Shown in pieces: positions 4,115 through 33,213 of a DNA stretch of 64,000 bases. Source of the DNA: Leidyana gryllorum EB-2025a (taxonomy: Eukaryota; Protista; Apicomplexa); contig JBLWGC010000173.1 in assembly GCA_048772705.1 (NCBI GenBank), forward strand, positions 124,001-188,000, in the 5' to 3' direction. Below the pieces are notes generated by a model. That model made no database searches. It saw nothing but the letters and a program-made list of their open reading frames with translations, and had not been told where the DNA came from. Positions within the stretch are counted from its first letter, which is position 1; the number at the start of each line of letters is the position of its first letter. A program made the position numbers and the translations under genes.

Positions 4115-5754
<1,640 letters not shown>

Positions 5755-6303: not shown

Positions 6304-7757
6304 ATGTCCTTCCGTCAGGGCACCGCTAAATCCCTCTCTTCAACCCCAGTCGCCGAAGCTCACGAGTCTTTAGAGCTTGGCGATGCCGCACCCGCTGTGG
6401 AACACCAAAATGGAGGCGCCAAGGTCAGCATATGGCAAGGTATACTATTTCTAGTGGCGGGTACTGCACAATTGTTCTACTGGAATGCACTATTAAATAT
6501 GATTGGCGATATCAACGATGAGTTCTACAAAGATAACTCCAATCTTTCTGATACACTCACCGCCGTCTACAACACATTCAACTTGCTGACTGCCATCCTC
6601 ATCACCTGGCGCGGTTCTCTTAATATTCCTCTCAACATAGGAGCAGGCTGTGCCCTCGCTCTTTCCCACATTATCACAGGTGTCTGCGTACAATCGATAA
6701 AGGTATGTTTCAAAAATTCCCTGAAGATCTAACGTGATCGATCATCAACACTTTCTCCCGATCTACAACACTTTCTCCCAACACTTTGGAATGTTTGAAA
6801 TGTGTGTCTGGAATGTGTGTCTCCTTTGTGCAGGGTGTTGGAAGCGTGGTCGTCCTCCATATACTGTGCGCCGTCGCCGGAGGTGCCGGCGGTTTATTCC
6901 AAGCATGTCACTACGCACTTGCTGGATCTATGCCGAAGCCAATGTCCGGCTGGGTGTCGGTGGGGAATGGTATATCAGGATTACTGACCTTCGGACTGTG
7001 GATGCTTTTCTCTGAGGCTGCACTGAAGGGAAGGATACTGGCGTGTCTATGGTGGACCATGGGTATTGGTGCTGCACTGTTGATTTTCAGCAACTACTGT
7101 ATGTGGCGGCTAGCTCAACGGCCTGAAGTGGCGGCCAATATGGACAACACGCGTCAGAGGATTGCGATGCTCAAGAATGATCCATCAACACCCTCGTACT
7201 GGGCAGTGTTCAAAATGACCGCCCCGATGACGATGAGTATCTTCTTTGTCTTCTTCATAACTCTATTCGTAAGCAATGCCCGTTGACTTGCTGATCGGAC
7301 GGTGATGTTTGATTTGCAGTTGTATCCTAACATCGGTCCGTTCCGCTGGAACTACGATGGCAATACGGAAGCCAACGTGTTGATGGGTATGTATCAAGTT
7401 GGCGACTTTGTTGGAAGATCTTTATCACTGTTGGCGGGTTGGATGCCCTGGTTGATTCTGAGCCCCAAGATTCTGTACTCCTCAGTAATTGGACGTCTCG
7501 TATTTTTGCTGCTCTTCGTCCTCATGTGGAAGCAGCCCGACGTGTCAATCTGGGCTAGTTATGGGTGGCAGATCTTTATGATGCTCTGCTTGTCCATCAC
7601 CAATGGATGGTTCGGTACTTGCGGAATGATTCATGGGCCTGGACGCGTTCCCAACGAAGAGCACCGAGCGCGTGGCGCCGCTATCTGTCTTGTCGGACTA
7701 CTGGCTGGTATTGTCGCTGGTTTGTGGTGCGCCAAGCTGGCAACATTGGGCGGTTAA
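6304..7757 (+). CDS. Equilibrative nucleoside transporter (ENT/SLC29 family), multi-exon
   Basis: Many hydrophobic segments. Motifs: LFYWNALL, SVGNGISG, FFITLFLYPNI (across an intron), YQVGDFVGRS, LSITNGWFGT, terminal GLLAGIVAG. Introns at about 6703-6833 and 7269-7319. Confidence 0.88.
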
Positions 7758-10001: not shown

Positions 10002-10079
10002 GAGTGAGTGAGAGTGAAAGTGAAAGTGTGAATGAGAGTGAAAGTGTGAATGATAGTGAAAGTGTGAATGAGAGTGAAA
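10002..10079. repeat. Tandem minisatellite, about 18-bp unit GAGAGTGAAAGTGTGAAT, about 4 copies
   Basis: Read directly: ...gagagtgaaagtgaaagtgtgaat gagagtgaaagtgtgaat gatagtgaaagtgtgaat gagagtgaaa... Confidence 0.9.
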
Positions 10080-10200: not shown

Positions 10201-11235
10201 TTATCGCAGGCAGAAACCTTCACCGAAAGGGTCTCTCGGGTCCAGAACAAAAGTGCTGAAGGCAGTTATGTAAGCGTGCCCAGCAACATAGGGAATTACA
10301 CCGGCAAAAGTGGCCGTTTCACCCTTGATTTCCGTTTCGCGCAACACTCGCGCTCTGAATTTCGCCCCCACAATCGATTCATAGACAAAGTCTTCGTTCA
10401 GGCCCAATTCACCCTTGGCATACATCAGAGCTACCTTTGCGGAAGTTCCGGTGCCACAAGGCGATCGGTCCACTTGTCCGTCACCGAAAACCACCACATT
10501 ACGGGCATTAGCAGTCGTGGTACGAGTACTGTAGAATTCAACAAGATCAACTTTGTTAATATGCGCCCGCGTGGGATGTTGCACGGGAATGTTTTCGTTC
10601 ACATAGTCTCGGATAAGCAGACCCACCCGAGAGAACTCCGAAGCGTTCTCGGGCTCGATCTTCATATCGAGATCATAATTGTTGTCCACGTTAACGATCA
10701 CAAAGAAGGATCCACCAAACGAGATATCGAATTTCACGTGACCGACACCCGGAAGATTTTCGATCTCAATGTTCGATTGGTAAACAAAGGAGGGAACGTT
10801 CTGGAAGCCAACTTCGCCAACATCATTATGCTCCCCACTAACAGCCGCGTGTACCTCCACAAATCCGGCAGGCGTGTCCAATCGTACTATAGTTTCCGGC
10901 TGCTTTACTTCGACCATCCCTGTGCTCACAGCAGCAGTCACAGCTGCGATAGTATTGTGTCCACACATGTTCAGGTATCCACCAGCGTCCATAAAGACAA
11001 TGCCAAAGTCACTATCTTTGTTCACAGGCGGGGTAAGATACGCGCCGAACATGTCGTTATGCCCACGAGGCTCGAGCATTAGCATTTTACGTAATCCATC
11101 ATGCTTCGTCTTCATATACGATCTCTTCTCTGCCATATCATCACCAGGGAAATTCAACAGTCCTCCGGTCACAATACGAGCAGGTTCACCAGCGCAGTGA
11201 GCGTCAATAACACTTAGAGAACGGACGTACTTCAT
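10201..11235 (-). CDS. PRAC: Proline racemase (PrdF/TcPRAC type), single exon
   Basis: IDAHCAGEPARIV, MLEPRGHNDMFGA, GIVFMDAGGYLNMCGHNTIA (first catalytic Cys), FDISFGGSFF, NVVVFGDGQVDRSPCGTGTSA (second catalytic Cys), ESIVG, C-terminal DPRDPFGEGF. ATG at 11235. Confidence 0.95.
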   Translation of the reverse strand: MKYVRSLSVIDAHCAGEPARIVTGGLLNFPGDDMAEKRSYMKTKHDGLRKMLMLEPRGHNDMFGAYLTPPVNKDSDFGIVFMDAGGYLNMCGHNTIAAVTAAVSTGMVEVKQPETIVRLDTPAGFVEVHAAVSGEHNDVGEVGFQNVPSFVYQSNIEIENLPGVGHVKFDISFGGSFFVIVNVDNNYDLDMKIEPENASEFSRVGLLIRDYVNENIPVQHPTRAHINKVDLVEFYSTRTTTANARNVVVFGDGQVDRSPCGTGTSAKVALMYAKGELGLNEDFVYESIVGAKFRARVLRETEIKGETATFAGVIPYVAGHAYITAFSTFVLDPRDPFGEGFCLR

Positions 11236-11442
11236 TGTTTTACAGGAAAAAGACTGACCCGACAAGAGAGCTGTCGTTCAAGTCTCCAAGACTGATTGTG
11301 CAGAATTGATTTAGATAGATAGCTCTTACACTCAATTGGAGACGCACTCGAACAGTCCCAAACCGATACCCATATCCAGAACTCGGTGCTGCGCGTGTTG
11401 GTGCACCCCCTCCACACAGCCAAATTAAGGCTTTTTGGTACC

Positions 11443-14400
11443 ATGGAGGACGAGTTGGGGCCATGGCGCCCACGCCTGGAGAAGTACCGTGACCAATTGG
11501 ACCAGATAGACTTCACTGAAGTCGCAGCTCAAGTCGGCGTCAAAGTCAGCCAAGAATGGCAAATGAAGTCGTTCACATCCATATTGTCTACACTTCAATC
11601 CGGTAAGCACGACACCACACACGTGTGAGCCTGCTAATCCGCGCGTCTGATGAACGCTCGTTAACCTGCCTACACCTTCGTTTATCTAACAAGGGACCCC
11701 CCACACCATGACGACCCTGCCAGTGTCTTATTCATCGCTTTGTCCTGCAGAGGAGGAAAAGGCCAGCCCGCTCGTGGCCGCTGAGCTTCCTGTCGAGAAA
11801 GTGTTCGCTGACCACGACGAGATTCCACCACCTCCGGAAGGCCCTCTGGACCCTGTTGCGTTGGAAAAGGCAGCCACATATCTCAGAGGTACTGGAGTTC
11901 AGCTGGGGGAGGCTTTGACGGGTATTCGTTCTGGGGATGGTCTATTGCTCACGGCTGCTGATCCGGCCGTGGCCTTTGCGCCTGTAGGTTTGTGTCATCC
12001 GCACCTTCCACCCGACACAACGACGGCAGAACCGGAAGCTCTGCGACCCGAATACTTAGCAGTGCTCCGTTCAGCCGCCCGTGATTTACGGGAGCCTCCG
12101 GCCTCACTGGTACGAGGCATCACCTTTGACCCTACCGGACCGGCGTGGCGGAACGGGCGGCGCAGCTTCTTCTGTGCAGACCTAACTCTGTTCACATTGG
12201 CTGAGACGCACACACGTGCCGCAGCTGATAGTGTGTGGTGGTCAATGACCCCCCTCCACACACTCAGTGCCCAAATATATACTCCCCAAGAAAACAAAGC
12301 CGACTCCACCATGCATGCACCAATGAAAGGTCCCCTAGAGCGCCTTCTTGCTGCTGCAAGACGACCACGGTTAGAATCACGTCCCTACGCGCACGCCGTA
12401 GTCTTCGCCGACCTACCTGATGTTCTTCTCACATCGGCTGGTCTCTCACGAGTAGGCCGGCCGCGAACTTTGTTGCGTCTGCGCAGCCTGCGCTATCGCG
12501 ATGGGGACCTGGAGTTGAGTCTCAAAAAGGGTCGCTTCCTCTCGAACTCTGACACCTTCACACCTCCGGTCCAAGCGGAACCTTCCTTCCCCTGGCTGCT
12601 GCAACCCCAAGAACGTTCACAGATGCAACTCTTCACGGATTTACTGGTTGCGGACGAGGAGGACGCCGGGTTGCTCAACGGACCCCCCACCAAGCTACAA
12701 CGCCTGGATAATGAATCCTCACGCCGTCCCAGAGCTTCTCGGAGACGAGCCGATAAACCCATTGAAAAGCCTCCAGACCCTCCGGCAACAGACTCCAGGG
12801 CTCGTTCCGGAGCCAAAAGACCATCACGACGACGAAGACCCTCCAATGGGTCTAATCCGAGCACGACACCGTGTGTACGGGATGAGAGAGAGTTTCCTCT
12901 CAACCCCGTATGGGACGCAATACATTCCTGTTGGATTGTCGGTTGGGTTGTGAATGACCAACTCCACCACAAACACTTCTTCTGTGAGGTAAGCATACGA
13001 TCAGCTGCTCAGTGCGCACGACCCGACCTGGATGCCGACATGCAACCAACATCTTGTTCCGCCATCAAACGCGCACACGACACCACTCACTAGTACACCA
13101 TCAACGCATATGCAACCATCGAGCCCTCAGTAGGGTCCATCAGAGTCGTTGACAGTGTGTAATAGGTGGGTTACGGGTTTGGCGGCCAGGCGAAGCAGAG
13201 TTGACGGTGACGACAGGTTTGGGGGCGGTGTGTGTCCAACTACTAGGCATCATGTAACTAATGTTGGTTTGCAGAGTACCGATACCACTGATCAAAGTCG
13301 GAAGAAGGCAGAGGCAGATTTGTTCTGCAGGGTGATGGAAGCCGCTGCTAGTCAATATCGGCGAATGACCGCCCGAGCATACGTACGACAAGTTGAAGGG
13401 CGGCCCACACCGTCGTCACCAACGTACACTCAAGCAACGGCTCCACAACCCTCACCGGCTTCAGTGGCCACGCGAGCGTCTACCACACATGAAGAAGAAT
13501 TATTAGTACCTCCAGTGTCCAGTCACTTGGATCCCGAGCTGGTGAAGGCTCTCGAAGATACCTTGGGAGCTTCACAGACCAGCGGTCCAGTTTTGGCCAA
13601 CGCTTCTGGGAGAGCGGGCAGCAGCAGCACCAAGGATGGTACGCTGGCTGCTGCTGCTGCCACGAAGACGTTCCGTTGTTGCACCTTCCCTACCCTGATG
13701 GAAGCAGTGCAGTACGTTGATGATTTGGAGAAATTGGAGTTGTTGTTGACTGGGCAACGCACCGTATGGCAACATTTCATTGGTTTTGACCTGTCCGCAG
13801 GGCAAGAATTGCCTTTGTTCGCTCAGAAGCCATGGGACCAACGAGTGGCAACCCGATCTGAAGCCTTGACGGAAGGACGGCGGGACGCCAAGGCTTTCAA
13901 CTACGCCGAAAGGGTTGGATTGGTTGCCGAACTCTGTGAGCTGCTTGTCTCCCCCGTTCCACCCCCGGACAAGGACCGGCTGCTCACTACAGTCAGTGCC
14001 GAGAGTCCAGAGGTCTTCGTGAGTCCATCGGCCGATCGGGGCGGGAGCAGCCGGGGAGCTGGCAGCACTACAGCAGCAACCACATCTGGACCGACTGCAC
14101 CGAAGAATGGGAGCGGAAATAAAAGCGGCGGAGGCGGAGGAGGGAACAGTCGGAAACGAAGAGCGCCTGCACCTCCGGCGAAAGATAGTGTGGCTGCAGC
14201 GGCGTTGAAACGGCAAACGGACGCTGCCAATACACCGACAGGGACATCGAATAGTCAACAGATCATACAGAATGTGCTGTCGAATGCGGCTGCCAATGCA
14301 GCCCCTCCGAGTCATCACTCTCCGTTGGATCGTCCACGAGTAGCAGCATTCGCGAGGGCAGCAGAAGGAGCAACAAGAGCCCGCAGACAAAGGCCAGCTG

Positions 14401-30024: not shown

Positions 30025-31862
30025 ATGTCAGACTTAACATTAACCCATCGTGGTATTCGCCAGGCCCGCAAACGCCCCCCCCCACCACCATCTCCCACCG
30101 CTGATAGGATTTTCCTCCCCAGACAGAAGATCTGTAATGTTATCGAGTTCGGAACCTTCGATTCGAAACCACAACCTAAGCAAATCTCTATCGAATACGC
30201 CTATGAGTCATGGATTGACTCTTTGTGCAAAGCCCGAACCGACTCTAAGCTCAAAGTAGCTGCATTTGCTCCCGAACATGTCCTGGCGGGTGAGTGAGTC
30301 ATGACTAACTTGAGTGACTGTGTGATGTTGAGAGAAACACCGTGCGGCTGTCGTCACACCGGATATCTTTTCCCGGTGGACAGTGTCGAACATGTGGTAA
30401 AACCCCGTTGAGATGCTAACGGTGCTTCGTGTGCGTCCAAACGTGTGTCTCGTCATGTCATTGCAGTTTGTCCTGAGATTCGGTCTCTCTGGCGCAGTTA
30501 TCGGCTGTCGGCGCGCCCCCTCTTGATTCGCACCATACTTCCGACATTGCAGCAGTGGGTCCTGATGGCGAGTTGTTGGGTGCTGAATACTTCAAAGGTC
30601 CCCGCGGTTACGGGTTTTCTCGTTAGCAGGTGTTGCTTCTCAGCTTGGGCCAGGTATGCTAATGAATGTTGCGAACGAGCCGTGTTTGTCTGTGCTGCCG
30701 TTGACTGCGCTCTCTTTGGCGGGCTGTCGCAACGTGGGTGGACCTCCCGTCACGCGCCTTCTGGAGCGAGTACCCCGCTTGAGGCGGATCAACCTGTCTG
30801 GATGCCCGAGTTCCCTTACCTCCACTGTTCAACGTCAACTGGCCCAGTTCCTACAATCTGGTCAGCTGCAAGCTCTAGCGTTCCAGGGCAGTCCCGTCAT
30901 CGCAGAAGGGGATGAGGCTCGCCCTTTGATCGATCTGTCCTGCCCAGGGTCGAACCTCTCCCGCCTCGAGATCCTAGAAGTTCGGCGAGCGCGTCTGAGG
31001 CTGAAAGCTAACACCCCGTTGTTCCCGCTAAGTCTGGTGAGCCAGTCGAGTTTGCGGGATGTTACAGATGCGAGCATGTAGAAGCGCCTCTGTCTCCGAG
31101 AAGTGGACTTGGAGATTCTTATTGAGCCAGCGGAGCTGTATAGATTTCCACATTTGAAGGTCGTCACCCTCGAGAGTGAGAATATGTCAATCGCTGTCTG
31201 TCACCGACACGTTGTAGACGTGACCTTGGATCCTACGGCTCTGCAGCGCTTCATTAAGTGTTGTTCCAACCTGGAGTCCTTCACGCTCGCAAATATGACT
31301 TCTCTGAATCAGGAGAATTGGGATTCGCAGGCCGGAGAGCTCTTTTGGTTGGGGCTCTTTCCTCAACAAGCCACACCCACACAGACTCCACCAGATATAG
31401 ATGATGATATGACCGAACAGCCGGTCGACCCTCCTATACTGCCACTGACGTTGAGACGCCTCAAAGTGTATAAAGACCCCGGGTAAGTTGGATCAGAGAG
31501 GGCGTTGCACTGACTCATCGTCCTGAAGATTCACACCATTGGTGGCGGTATTCTTGGTGATCATGTACTCTGGCTTGCGAAATCTGACATTGAGACACTG
31601 CGACGCCCTGGATGGAGATGTTGTTAGTCATCTGGCCGGGATGCCGGTTCCCCAGGAATACGTGGCTGCCCCCAGACAGCTCTCGATAGTCATTGAAGGT
31701 CCCACATCGGTTCTACCACTGGAGTTTCGGTTGGCACTACAAGAAATGGGTCTGCGCGGTATCAGCATTGTCGCCAAAAGTGCACCGGCAAGTAGCAACG
31801 CCAAACACAACGGTCACTCGAGACTAATCCCACCAATCCGTCATCCGGTGTTCTCACTGTAG
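30025..31862 (+). CDS. Leucine-rich-repeat (F-box/AMN1-like LRR) protein, multi-exon
   Basis: LTALSLAGC, LRRINLSGC, LEILEV, LESFTLANM, LRRLKV and LRNLTLRHC repeats across exons. The start codon is tentative. Confidence 0.6.
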
Positions 31863-33213
31863 TGGAGTTTGGACCCGAGCTGCAATCTCAGATATGGTCG
31901 ATTCAATCATCCGAGCGGCGGTTTCCAGTTCCGCCTCAGTGATAACCAGAGGAGGAGTGAGGCGCACTGTGTGCTCATGCGTTGGCTTGACGAGCAACCC
32001 TTTCCCTTTAAGTGCGACGCAAAGATCCCAGGCGTTGACGCCAGTTGCAGTTTGATCGATTTCCATCGCCATCATCAGACCCTTACCCCGAACCGCCCGC
32101 ACCACTTGGGGATACTTAGTGCGGATCTTCTGCAAGTCCGACAAAAACTTTGACCCCACCTTGGCGGCATTCTCAACCATCTTCTCACTGATCAAAGCGT
32201 CCAATGCGGCCATTAAGACGGCACACGCCAGGGGATTGCCGCCGAACGTACTACCATGTTGTCCCGGCTTGATGCATAGCATGATGTCATCATCGGCCAG
32301 TACTGCAGAAATGGGTAGCACCCCACCTGACAGTGCCTTCCCCATCAAAACAATCTCGGGACGGACATTGTCATGGTGGCAGGCCAACAAACGGCCAGTT
32401 CGGCCAAGACCGGATTGTATCTCATCGCACATGAGCAAGCAATTATTCTTTAAACACAACTTGTGGGCTGCTTCCAAATATCCATTGTCCGGGATGATGA
32501 CTCCAGCTTCACCCTGAATGCAGTTGTTGCAATGTTACAGCACATTCGGCATGGCGCACACATGTGTGCGCGAACAGAAAGATGGCACAATGTGTCCGCT
32601 GCCTTACCTGAATAGGCTCAACCAGAAACGCTGCGACTCTGTCCCGGTACTCCTCTAATATAGTCTTGAGCGCCGAAATGTCATTAAATGGTACGTTAAT
32701 GAAACCGGGGGCACGCGGGCCGAAGCCCCCGTAGCTATCCGGATCCGTAGAAAAGGATATAACAGTTGAAGTACGGCCGTGGAAATTGTCTCTGGCCGTG
32801 ATGATCAAGGCCTGATCTGTGGGCACCCCTTTTTTGTCGTACGCCCATCTTCTCGCAAGTTTGATCCCACTTTCCACGGCTTCAGCTCCCGAGTTCATCA
32901 ACAAGGCTTTCTGATATCCAAAAGTGTCGCATAAGAGTTTCTCGGCGGGTCCGAGGCGATCATTGTAGAAAGCACGTGAAGTAAGGGTTACAAGCTGAGC
33001 TTGTTCTACGAGCGCGTTGATGATCTTTGGGTGTCGGTGGCCCTGATTGACTGCCGAGTAAGCTGCGAGGAAGTCCATATATTGGCGACCTTCCACATCA
33101 TAAACATAGATCCCTTCGGCACGTCCAATGACCACCGGAAGGGGATGGTAGTTATGAGCGCCATATTGACTTTCAAGAGCGATTAAATCTTGTGCAGACA
33201 TGTGTTCTCTCAT
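31854..33213 (-). CDS. OAT: Ornithine aminotransferase (class III PLP enzyme)
   Basis: YGAHNYHPLPVV, YSAVNQGHRHP, LTSRAFYND, MNSGAEAVE, NFHGRT, EPIQ|GEAG (intron 32514-32607), DEIQSGLGRTG, GKALSGG (PLP Lys), PGQHGSTFGGNPL. Confidence 0.96.

What the first reader, a model, noticed from the sequence alone, without database searches (positions are those of the whole stretch)
10201..11235. Intronless bacterial-type proline racemase in an apicomplexan genome (candidate horizontal gene transfer, possible D-proline metabolism)
Seen in sequence: a complete 344-aa single-exon ORF with both catalytic cysteines (YLNMCGH, DRSPCGTGT) and Phe in DMFG and NVVVFG. It is flanked by intron-containing eukaryotic genes and has no signal peptide. 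Established: the Cys/Cys pair plus these aromatic residues distinguishes true proline racemases (Clostridium PrdF, Trypanosoma cruzi PRAC) from hydroxyproline 2-epimerases and from the Cys/Thr trans-3-hydroxyproline dehydratases usual in animals and fungi. Proline racemase is not a standard part of Plasmodium or Toxoplasma metabolism as far as I know. Inference: the gene was acquired from gut Firmicutes-like bacteria, independently of trypanosomes, and lets the parasite make or use D-proline. Possible roles are scavenging bacterial D-Pro, a Stickland-like redox sink, or protecting wall proteins from proteases.
Basis: partly seen in the sequence, partly recalled or inferred. Interest (0 to 1): 0.85.

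Follow-up and report, generated by a model that had tools for sequence, protein, structure and literature searches.

The report
Captured bacterial proline racemase in gregarine
A gregarine-like gut parasite (a relative of the malaria parasite) carries an intact, conserved copy of the bacterial enzyme that converts L-proline to D-proline, taken from the same group of gut bacteria that gave trypanosomes their proline racemase, but without the bacterial partner enzymes that consume D-proline.

Summary
Window 10201-11235 (minus strand) is an uninterrupted 344-aa PF05544 gene. It has both catalytic cysteines (Cys91, Cys260) and every published proline-racemase discriminator I could check.

It is a real part of a eukaryotic chromosome:
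- Its ATG lies 207 bp head-to-head from a gene with a conserved GTAAG..CAG intron.
- An independent assembly of a second species (L001) has the same gene pair: racemase 72% identical, neighbour 82%.
- A glutathione-reductase exon 5 kb away matches gregarine transcriptomes best.

In a mixture-model ML tree the gene sits (100/100) inside the Bacilli-type branch of Bacillota PrdF. That branch also holds the Trypanosoma racemases. The closest bacterial copies are the last gene of complete D-proline reductase operons.

Not settled or not supported:
- Independence from trypanosomes is undecided by AU tests (p 0.56 and 0.55). One indel favours independence.
- The genome shows no PrdA/PrdB, D-amino-acid oxidase, OCD or proline dehydrogenase, so a Stickland-like sink is unsupported.
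- It does have ornithine aminotransferase (in this window) and four P5C-reductase hits.

Verdict: a domesticated orphan PrdF-type proline racemase, a new member of a known kind. I found no report in the searchable literature. The scan holds no earlier finding of this gene on other DNA.

The parts
10201..11235 (-). Single-exon proline racemase gene (344 aa plus stop), PrdF/TcPRAC type
   Evidence: only PF05544 copy in the assembly
10963..10965 (-). Codon of catalytic Cys91 in the NMCGH motif (TcPRAC Cys130 equivalent)
   Evidence: criterion from PMC1964878
10456..10458 (-). Codon of catalytic Cys260 in DRSPCGTGTSAKVA (the MIII motif; TcPRAC Cys300 equivalent)
   Evidence: criterion
11047..11049 (-). 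Codon of Phe63, specificity residue R1 (TcPRAC Phe102); Ser or Val in hydroxyproline epimerases
10543..10545 (-). Codon of Leu231, specificity residue R2 (TcPRAC Cys270; Leu in other racemases, His in hydroxyproline epimerases)
10486..10488 (-). Codon of Phe250 (TcPRAC Phe290 equivalent)
11236..11442 (.). 207-bp head-to-head intergenic region shared with the upstream neighbour; partly conserved in the sister species
11443..11602 (+). Exon 1 of the divergently oriented eukaryotic neighbour gene
   Evidence: Conserved in L001; ends at a GTAAG donor
11603..11750 (+). 148-nt phase-1 intron (GTAAG...CAG) of the neighbour gene, also present in L001
   Evidence: protein conservation with L001 starts exactly at the acceptor
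11751..13093 (+). Exon 2 of the neighbour gene, 82% identical to the gene next to the racemase in L001 (conserved synteny)
   Evidence: no Pfam domain found
10007..10079 (.). 18-bp minisatellite (4.1 copies) about 120 bp 3' of the stop codon
4481..5425 (+). Internal exon of a glutathione-reductase-like gene, used as taxonomic anchor for the contig
   Evidence: best named hits: Gregarina sp. and Protomagalhaensia sp. transcriptomes, 51-54%
31854..33213 (-). Two-exon ornithine aminotransferase, the only Aminotran_3 gene in the assembly; context for a supply of P5C and L-proline

Best explanation
The gene encodes a PLP-independent, two-cysteine proline racemase of the PrdF/TcPRAC type. It interconverts L- and D-proline: Cys91 and Cys260 act as the acid/base pair on the alpha-carbon, in a hydrophobic pocket formed by Phe63, Leu231 and Phe250. 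A gregarine-lineage ancestor captured it from a Bacillota bacterium, where it was the last gene (prdF) of the D-proline reductase operon. Only the racemase was kept. It has been fixed in the chromosome since before two sampled species split, and it is under purifying selection. In this species it has no targeting sequence, so it is most likely cytosolic (inferred). The assembly shows no detectable D-proline-consuming enzyme and no proline dehydrogenase, but it has ornithine aminotransferase and four P5C-reductase hits. The most likely physiological direction is therefore L-proline (made from ornithine or taken from the host) to free D-proline as an end product, as is proposed for Trypanosoma. 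This last step is inference only.
For: Identity. All Goytia-2007 discriminators are of the racemase type. The NCBIfam proline-racemase score (439 bits) lies between the experimentally validated TcPRAC (448) and TvPRAC (414). Integration: eukaryotic flanks with introns; conserved gene pair in an independent assembly of another species; GC3 of 0.50 within the range of neighbouring genes and codon-usage correlation within the host range. Selection: pN 0.18 against saturated pS 0.76, with both cysteines and the specificity residues retained in both species. Origin: the 26-row clade of Bacilli-type PrdF, Trypanosoma and this gene has 100/100 support. Apart from the sister species, the top 120 hits among 5.8 billion proteins reach at most 58% identity, and every one that carries a name is Bacillota. 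The nearest bacterial copies sit in prdC-A-B-D-E-F operons. Orphan status: no PF09338, PF07355, PF02423 or PF01619 match in the assembly, and the DAO hit is a FAD_binding_2 protein. L-proline supply: OAT and P5CR hits at four places.
Against: No enzyme assay exists. GC3 of the closest bacterial genes (0.35-0.47) is not far from the host's, so composition alone is weak evidence. The absence of partner enzymes rests on six-frame searches of a 237-contig assembly, and the controls for the PrdA/PrdB families had no positive genome. The direction of flux and the fate of D-proline are pure inference. Both gregarine copies carry His-Cys in place of the conserved His-Thr in the N-terminal HTxGE motif, with unknown effect.
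Confidence: 0.8

Rival explanations
1. Shared origin with the Trypanosoma racemases: one bacterial transfer followed by eukaryote-to-eukaryote transfer, for example in a shared insect gut.
For: A quick LG+G4 tree joined the gregarine pair to T. vivax PRAC (SH-aLRT 88). Holding the gregarine pair and four Trypanosoma sequences together gives a likelihood 1.39 units higher than the free tree, p-AU 0.559. Both belong to the same Bacilli-type clade (PMC4417235).
Against: Both are long branches (stems 0.71 and 0.54), which invites long-branch attraction. Under the mixture model they are not sisters. An incompatible tree that separates them is equally likely (p 0.551). Each is more similar to bacteria than to the other: 52-58% against 48%. 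Trypanosoma shares the 2-aa insertion of the Bacilli type, while the gregarine genes have the clostridial-type length there; no shared exclusive indel was seen.
Confidence: 0.2
2. The physiological role is the reverse direction: salvage of D-proline released by gut bacteria into L-proline for protein synthesis.
For: The enzyme is freely reversible. The parasite lives among Bacillota whose prd operons make D-proline. T. cruzi takes up D-proline (PMC12153322).
Against: The genome appears able to make L-proline itself (OAT and P5CR hits). In prd-operon bacteria the reductase consumes D-proline, so free D-proline is unlikely to be a rich resource (inference).
Confidence: 0.2
3. It is a hydroxyproline 2-epimerase, a bifunctional enzyme, or acts on another cyclic imino acid.
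For: The family contains such enzymes, including bifunctional archaeal ones (PMC4364671, title and abstract). The His-Cys change in the HTxGE motif is unusual. The NCBIfam score is below the equivalog cut-off.
Against: R1 is Phe, R2 is Leu, and the HyPRE xLA block is absent. The 4-Hyp epimerase models score far lower (311 against 439 bits). Validated TcPRAC and TvPRAC are also below that cut-off. The gene is bracketed in the tree by validated racemases.
Confidence: 0.07
4. Bacterial contamination or a chimeric contig.
For: Intronless gene whose best named hits are all bacterial.
Against: 207 bp from an intron-bearing eukaryotic gene. The same gene pair in the same orientation occurs in an independently assembled contig of another species. 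Only 52-58% identical to any bacterium. Eukaryotic genes lie on both sides within a contig of at least 188 kb.
Confidence: 0.01
5. Vertical inheritance of an ancient alveolate gene.
For: A dinoflagellate (Effrenium voratum) has a PF05544 protein.
Against: That protein is only 38% identical, has Ser instead of the first Cys and lacks the R1 Phe, so it belongs to another subfamily. The gene is nested in Bacillota with 100/100 support. Gregarine transcriptomes are in the protein database yet gave no hit among the top 120.
Confidence: 0.02

Closest known systems
Trypanosoma proline racemases (TcPRACA/B, TvPRAC; PDB 1w61)
   Same: Eukaryotic parasite genes captured from Bacilli-type Bacillota prdF, in the same 100/100 clade. 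Same Cys/Cys pair, MCGH and MIII motifs, R1 Phe and Phe290. Orphan racemase without a D-proline reductase. Similar NCBIfam scores (439 against 448 and 414).
   Different: About 48-50% identity. This gene lacks the Bacilli/Trypanosoma 2-aa insertion and the Trypanosoma C-terminal loop insertions, and has its own 3-aa and 4-aa insertions. The host is an apicomplexan. No secreted isoform is evident in this species. Mitogenic and virulence roles are unknown and not implied.
Bacterial PrdF of the D-proline reductase (Stickland) operon: Bacilli type (Listeria ilorinensis, Vagococcus, Enterococcus, Gemella) and clostridial type (Acetoanaerobium sticklandii AsProR, PDB 7pb3)
   Same: 52-58% identity over the full length, the same active-site residues, about the same length, and no targeting sequence.
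   Different: In bacteria it is co-transcribed with prdC, prdA, prdB, prdD and prdE and the selenocysteine machinery. Here it is a solitary gene with a eukaryotic bidirectional promoter region, and none of those partners is in the genome.
4-hydroxyproline 2-epimerase (PaHyPRE, Brucella PrpA)
   Same: Same fold and the same Cys/Cys two-base mechanism.
   Different: HyPRE has Ser or Val at R1, His at R2 and an xLA block after MIII. This protein has Phe, Leu and LMY.
trans-3-hydroxy-L-proline dehydratase (human L3HYPDH and bacterial homologues)
   Same: PF05544 fold; this is the usual eukaryotic (animal and fungal) member of the family.
   Different: The dehydratases replace the second Cys by Thr. 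This protein keeps Cys260.
Candida parapsilosis proline-racemase-family gene acquired by HGT (PMC2459174)
   Same: An interdomain transfer of a PF05544 gene into a eukaryote.
   Different: Different recipient. Its donor clade was not compared here.

Membership tests
Proline racemase, PrdF/TcPRAC type (EC 5.1.1.4) | Full-length PF05544 domain | tested here: met
   379.7 bits, residues 9-341 on profile positions 1-324 of 325
Proline racemase, PrdF/TcPRAC type (EC 5.1.1.4) | Two catalytic cysteines in the MCGH and DRSPCGxGxxAxxA (MIII) motifs | tested here: met
   Cys91 in NMCGH and Cys260 in DRSPCGTGTSAKVA; criterion from PMC1964878
Proline racemase, PrdF/TcPRAC type (EC 5.1.1.4) | R1 aromatic Phe (TcPRAC Phe102) and Phe290 | tested here: met
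   Phe63 (DMFG) and Phe250 (VVVFG)
Proline racemase, PrdF/TcPRAC type (EC 5.1.1.4) | R2 is Cys or Leu, not His (TcPRAC position 270) | tested here: met
   Leu231 in KVDLVEF, aligned to TcPRAC VDCVEI
Proline racemase, PrdF/TcPRAC type (EC 5.1.1.4) | R3: no HyPRE-type xLA block after MIII | tested here: met
   LMY follows MIII here (TLY in TcPRAC; TLH or ALH in other PrdF). The paper's figure was not available, so the register is taken from its text.
Proline racemase, PrdF/TcPRAC type (EC 5.1.1.4) | Phylogenetic placement among validated racemases | tested here: met
   Inside the 100/100 clade that holds TcPRAC and TvPRAC, next to clostridial PrdF
Proline racemase, PrdF/TcPRAC type (EC 5.1.1.4) | NCBIfam equivalog cut-off for PRK13969 (556 bits). 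This is an annotation threshold, not a biochemical criterion. | tested here: not met
   439 bits. Control: validated TcPRAC scores 448 and TvPRAC 414; operon-encoded Bacilli-type PrdF score 542 and 521, all below the cut-off; only clostridial PrdF passes (631). The threshold therefore does not discriminate function in this clade.
Proline racemase, PrdF/TcPRAC type (EC 5.1.1.4) | Racemisation of L/D-proline, inhibited by pyrrole-2-carboxylate | not testable with these tools
   Needs recombinant enzyme
4-hydroxyproline 2-epimerase | Ser or Val at R1, His at R2, xLA block | tested here: not met
   Phe63, Leu231 and LMY; 4-Hyp epimerase models score 311 bits or less, below their cut-offs
trans-3-hydroxy-L-proline dehydratase | Second catalytic residue is Thr (Cys/Thr pair) | tested here: not met
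   Cys260 is retained; 340 bits against a 540 cut-off
Stickland D-proline reductase system (prd operon) | PrdA (PF09338) and PrdB (PF07355) in the same genome | tested here: not met
   No match in G000. The same families are readily detected in the bacterial loci L020, L021 and L022. Caveat: the assembly is fragmented.
Horizontally transferred gene fixed in a eukaryote | Physical linkage to eukaryotic genes, confirmed independently | tested here: met
   Conserved head-to-head pair with an intron-bearing gene in a second species' contig. Read-level confirmation was not possible.

The most novel reading that the evidence does not exclude
Two unrelated parasite lineages, trypanosomes and gregarines, hold the same Bacilli-type prdF. 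Either the gene passed between the two eukaryotes after a single bacterial transfer (for example in a shared invertebrate gut), or making free D-proline is a convergent parasite strategy: ornithine to P5C to L-proline to D-proline as a non-metabolisable, excreted end product or host- or microbiota-directed molecule. In the sister species the enzyme may even be secreted, since it has a signal-peptide-like N-terminus.
Probability: 0.2. Interest if true: 0.75.

Novelty: new member of a known kind. Interest (0 to 1): 0.55.

Why it matters
PrdF-type proline racemases in eukaryotes were known essentially from Trypanosoma, where the enzyme is a studied drug target and immune modulator. Even there the role of D-proline is still called poorly understood (PMC12153322). 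A second, unrelated parasite lineage has kept the same bacterial gene under purifying selection, again stripped of the reductase that gives it meaning in bacteria. This is a natural replicate. It suggests free D-proline (or L/D equilibration) has a selective value of its own for gut-dwelling parasites, and it offers a simpler system for asking what that value is. It also adds a dated, synteny-backed case to the list of bacterial metabolic genes captured by gregarines.

Tried and rejected
- LG+C20 tree of 99 rows: it did not finish in two calls. I replaced it with LG+G4 on 99 rows and the mixture model on 45 rows.
- Lineage-specific DNA pattern for HCAGEPARIVTGG in metagenome and genome collections: no hit.
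- The search for related loci: in metagenomes it found only bacterial relatives at 58% or less, several from Ga0131853 contigs, one of which is the contig of a Turicibacter MAG. It found no further gregarine-type copy.
- D-amino-acid oxidase: the best DAO hit is a FAD_binding_2 flavoprotein and the others match only the dinucleotide-binding motif.
- Compositional amelioration as an argument: rejected as weak, because the donors' GC3 (0.35-0.47) is close to the host's 0.50.
- Nei-Gojobori dS for the racemase pair is saturated, so only pN/pS of 0.24 as an upper bound is reported.
- A signal-peptide exon upstream in this species: not found. The 207-bp spacer holds only a 13-codon ORF closed by a stop before any donor site (read).
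- Literature searches for proline racemase with gregarine, Gregarina or Apicomplexa: nothing relevant.
- Spliced models: the neighbour gene's two exons were joined only inside a script, to check the reading frame.

Full report
**Observation**

The minus strand of window 10201-11235 holds an uninterrupted ORF of 344 codons from its ATG. The ORF stays open 10 codons further upstream to a TTG at 11265. The ATG has an A-rich context, AAAACAATGA.

- The protein matches Pfam Pro_racemase over its whole length (E 1.4e-113).
- Its best NCBIfam model is proline racemase: 439 bits, against 340 for trans-3-hydroxyproline dehydratase and 311 for 4-hydroxyproline epimerase.
- It aligns end to end with the solved racemases of Acetoanaerobium sticklandii (7pb3, 354 bits) and Trypanosoma cruzi (1w61, 340 bits).
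- It is the only PF05544 gene in the 15.5-Mb, 237-contig assembly.

**Is it a proline racemase rather than an epimerase or dehydratase?**

Goytia et al. 2007 (PMC1964878) define the discriminators:
- the Cys/Cys pair in the MCGH and MIII motifs;
- R1 = Phe102 (Ser or Val in hydroxyproline epimerases);
- R2 = Cys or Leu at position 270 (His in epimerases);
- an xLA block after MIII in epimerases (R3);
- Phe290.

Using the TcPRAC alignment, this protein has Phe63, Leu231, LMY and Phe250. All are of the racemase type. The Cys/Thr pair of the dehydratases is excluded because Cys260 is kept.

The protein is below NCBIfam's 556-bit equivalog cut-off. So are the experimentally validated TcPRAC (448 bits) and TvPRAC (414), and the operon-encoded Bacilli-type PrdF (542 and 521). 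Only clostridial PrdF passes, at 631. That threshold is therefore not informative here.

**Is it really in a eukaryotic chromosome?**

- *Upstream.* 207 bp away and divergently oriented lies a gene with exon 1 at 11443-11602. A 148-nt GTAAG...CAG phase-1 intron follows at 11603-11750. The second exon keeps the reading frame.
- *Downstream.* There are nucleoside-transporter exons at 6786-7757 and an internal exon of a glutathione-reductase-like gene at 4481-5425.
- *Taxonomy.* That exon's best named hits are gregarine single-cell transcriptomes (Gregarina sp., Protomagalhaensia sp., 51-54%). Nephromyces follows. The window also holds a UBR-box protein.
- *Independent assembly.* The best database hit of the racemase is P0001, 72% identical, on a 3.1-kb contig assembled independently from run ERR10900105. 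That contig carries the same neighbour gene (82% identical) in the same head-to-head orientation. It also has the same small first exon and intron.

This conserved gene pair rules out contamination or a chimeric join. It places the integration before the split of the two species. Between them the neighbour gene has a dS of about 0.8-1.0.

GC3 (0.50) and codon usage fall within the range of neighbouring genes. The donors' GC3 (0.35-0.47) is too close for this to weigh much.

**Selection**

Between the two species pN is 0.18 and pS is 0.76, which is saturated. The uncorrected ratio of 0.24 is therefore an upper bound. Both catalytic cysteines and all specificity residues are kept in both copies. 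The gene is maintained by purifying selection.

**Origin**

Among 5.8 billion proteins, every hit after P0001 is 52-58% identical. Every one that carries a name is Bacillota: Listeria ilorinensis, Neobacillus, Vagococcus, Enterococcus, Melissococcus, Gemella, and clostridia such as Romboutsia and Tepidibacter.

The trees gave the following:
- A 99-row LG+G4 tree put the gene with the Bacilli-type sequences. One unnamed representative was its sister. That representative turned out to be the Trypanosoma vivax racemase.
- I then fetched T. cruzi, T. grayi and T. conorhini sequences. I built a 45-row tree under LG+C20+F+G4 with bootstraps.
- A clade of Bacilli-type PrdF, the four Trypanosoma sequences and the two gregarine sequences has 100/100 support. 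It is nested among clostridial PrdF.
- Inside that clade the gregarine pair is unplaced (UFBoot 24-25).
- AU tests reject neither a gregarine+Trypanosoma clade (p 0.559) nor an incompatible tree (p 0.551). That second tree groups all Trypanosoma and Bacilli-type rows to the exclusion of the gregarine pair.

The alignment adds one rare change. Bacilli-type and Trypanosoma proteins share a 1-2-residue insertion (…EGAT… / …AKAT…). The gregarine proteins lack it and have the clostridial-type xP--xT there. I saw no indel shared only by the two eukaryotic groups. Each eukaryotic group is also more similar to bacteria than to the other.

I read this as two captures from the same bacterial neighbourhood (about 0.75-0.8). 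A shared origin is not excluded (about 0.2). Caballero et al. 2015 (PMC4417235) had traced the Trypanosoma gene to this same Gemella/Enterococcus/Melissococcus group.

Vertical descent is not supported. The one named alveolate homologue that surfaced, from the dinoflagellate Effrenium voratum, is 38% identical. It has Ser in place of the first Cys and lacks the R1 Phe.

**What the donor gene did, and what is left here**

In the three closest bacterial loci examined, the racemase is the last gene of a complete prdC-prdA-prdB-prdD-prdE-prdF operon. These loci are Listeria ilorinensis (56%), an uncultured Vagococcus cluster (58%) and a Turicibacter MAG (51%). In the Listeria and Vagococcus loci the operon is followed by selenocysteine-insertion genes.

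The gregarine assembly has no match to:
- the PrdA or PrdB families;
- ornithine cyclodeaminase/mu-crystallin;
- proline dehydrogenase;
- a true D-amino-acid oxidase; the best DAO hit is a FAD_binding_2 flavoprotein.

It does have one ornithine aminotransferase. This is a two-exon gene that happens to lie in this window at 31854-33213. It also has P5C-reductase hits at four places, two of them in tandem.

The gene is thus an orphan racemase, as in Trypanosoma. A Stickland-like sink is not supported. L-proline can plausibly be made from ornithine, and nothing detectable consumes D-proline. I therefore favour production of free D-proline as an end product. Salvage of bacterial D-proline is the main functional rival. 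Both are inference. Even for T. cruzi the role of D-proline is described as poorly understood (PMC12153322).

**Mechanism: what is shown and what is inferred**

- *Shown:* fold family, the catalytic pair and the pocket residues.
- *Inferred from TcPRAC and PrdF:* two-base deprotonation and reprotonation of the alpha-carbon, without a cofactor.
- *Inferred from the lack of any N-terminal extension:* cytosolic location.
- *Not known:* flux direction, fate of D-proline, and expression stage.

**Novelty**

Full-text searches found no paper that ties proline racemase to gregarines or Apicomplexa. A survey of HGT of D-amino-acid enzymes in eukaryotes lists only Trypanosoma and Candida for this family, plus a putative hydroxyproline racemase in a fungus (PMC5169069). 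The window's protein is not in the 5.8-billion-protein collection. This is a new member of a known kind: HGT-derived PrdF-type racemases in parasitic protists.

**Limits**

- The distribution in other gregarines is unknown. Gregarine transcriptomes are in the protein database, but an orthologue scoring under about 385 bits would not have been listed.
- Absence calls rest on a fragmented assembly.
- The species behind the window and behind ERR10900105 were not identified.
Exons were searched one by one, and the only join was a frame check inside a script.

Noticed in passing
L001:1940-2005 (N-terminus of P0001): The sister species' racemase ORF starts 17 codons earlier, with MKFGAIIVLWSGVCLAF. 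This is strongly hydrophobic (Kyte-Doolittle up to 2.4) and looks like a signal peptide. A second Met sits at the position of the bacterial start. The window species has no such extension. This recalls the secreted and cytosolic TcPRAC isoforms, but it may be a spurious ORF extension.
   Followed up: partly
window 11194-11196 (Cys14): Both gregarine racemases have His-Cys where every bacterial and trypanosome sequence aligned has His-Thr, in the N-terminal HTxGE motif. The effect is unknown.
   Followed up: no
window 31854-33213 (-): A two-exon ornithine aminotransferase, the only class-III aminotransferase hit in the assembly, lies 21 kb from the racemase (TIGR01885 halves 293 + 270 bits).
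   Followed up: partly
G000 C42:61610-63156, C213:65461-65724, C102:37006-37275: P5C-reductase dimerisation-domain hits at four places in a 15.5-Mb genome, two in tandem with identical scores, while proline dehydrogenase is not found. Proline may be a metabolic end product here.
   Followed up: partly
window 11236-11442 and L001:1726-1939: The short head-to-head spacer holds a block conserved between the two species, around window 11360-11385 on the minus strand (ATGGGT.T..GT.TGGGACTG). It may be a shared promoter element or a tiny upstream ORF.
   Followed up: no
protein P0364: An NCBI protein annotated as belonging to the fly Condylostylus longicornis is among the best matches (53%) to this gregarine-like glutathione reductase, alongside gregarine transcriptomes. 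This may be gregarine DNA in the fly assembly.
   Followed up: no
window 10007-10079: An 18-bp minisatellite (4.1 copies, 90% matches) lies about 120 bp downstream of the racemase stop codon, probably in the 3' UTR.
   Followed up: yes
L021 and L022 (Listeria ilorinensis; uncultured Vagococcus): In these Bacilli the prd operon is directly followed by a TauE-family gene and the selD, selB and selA selenocysteine genes, as one block. In the Turicibacter locus L020 a TauE-family gene also follows prdF.
   Followed up: no
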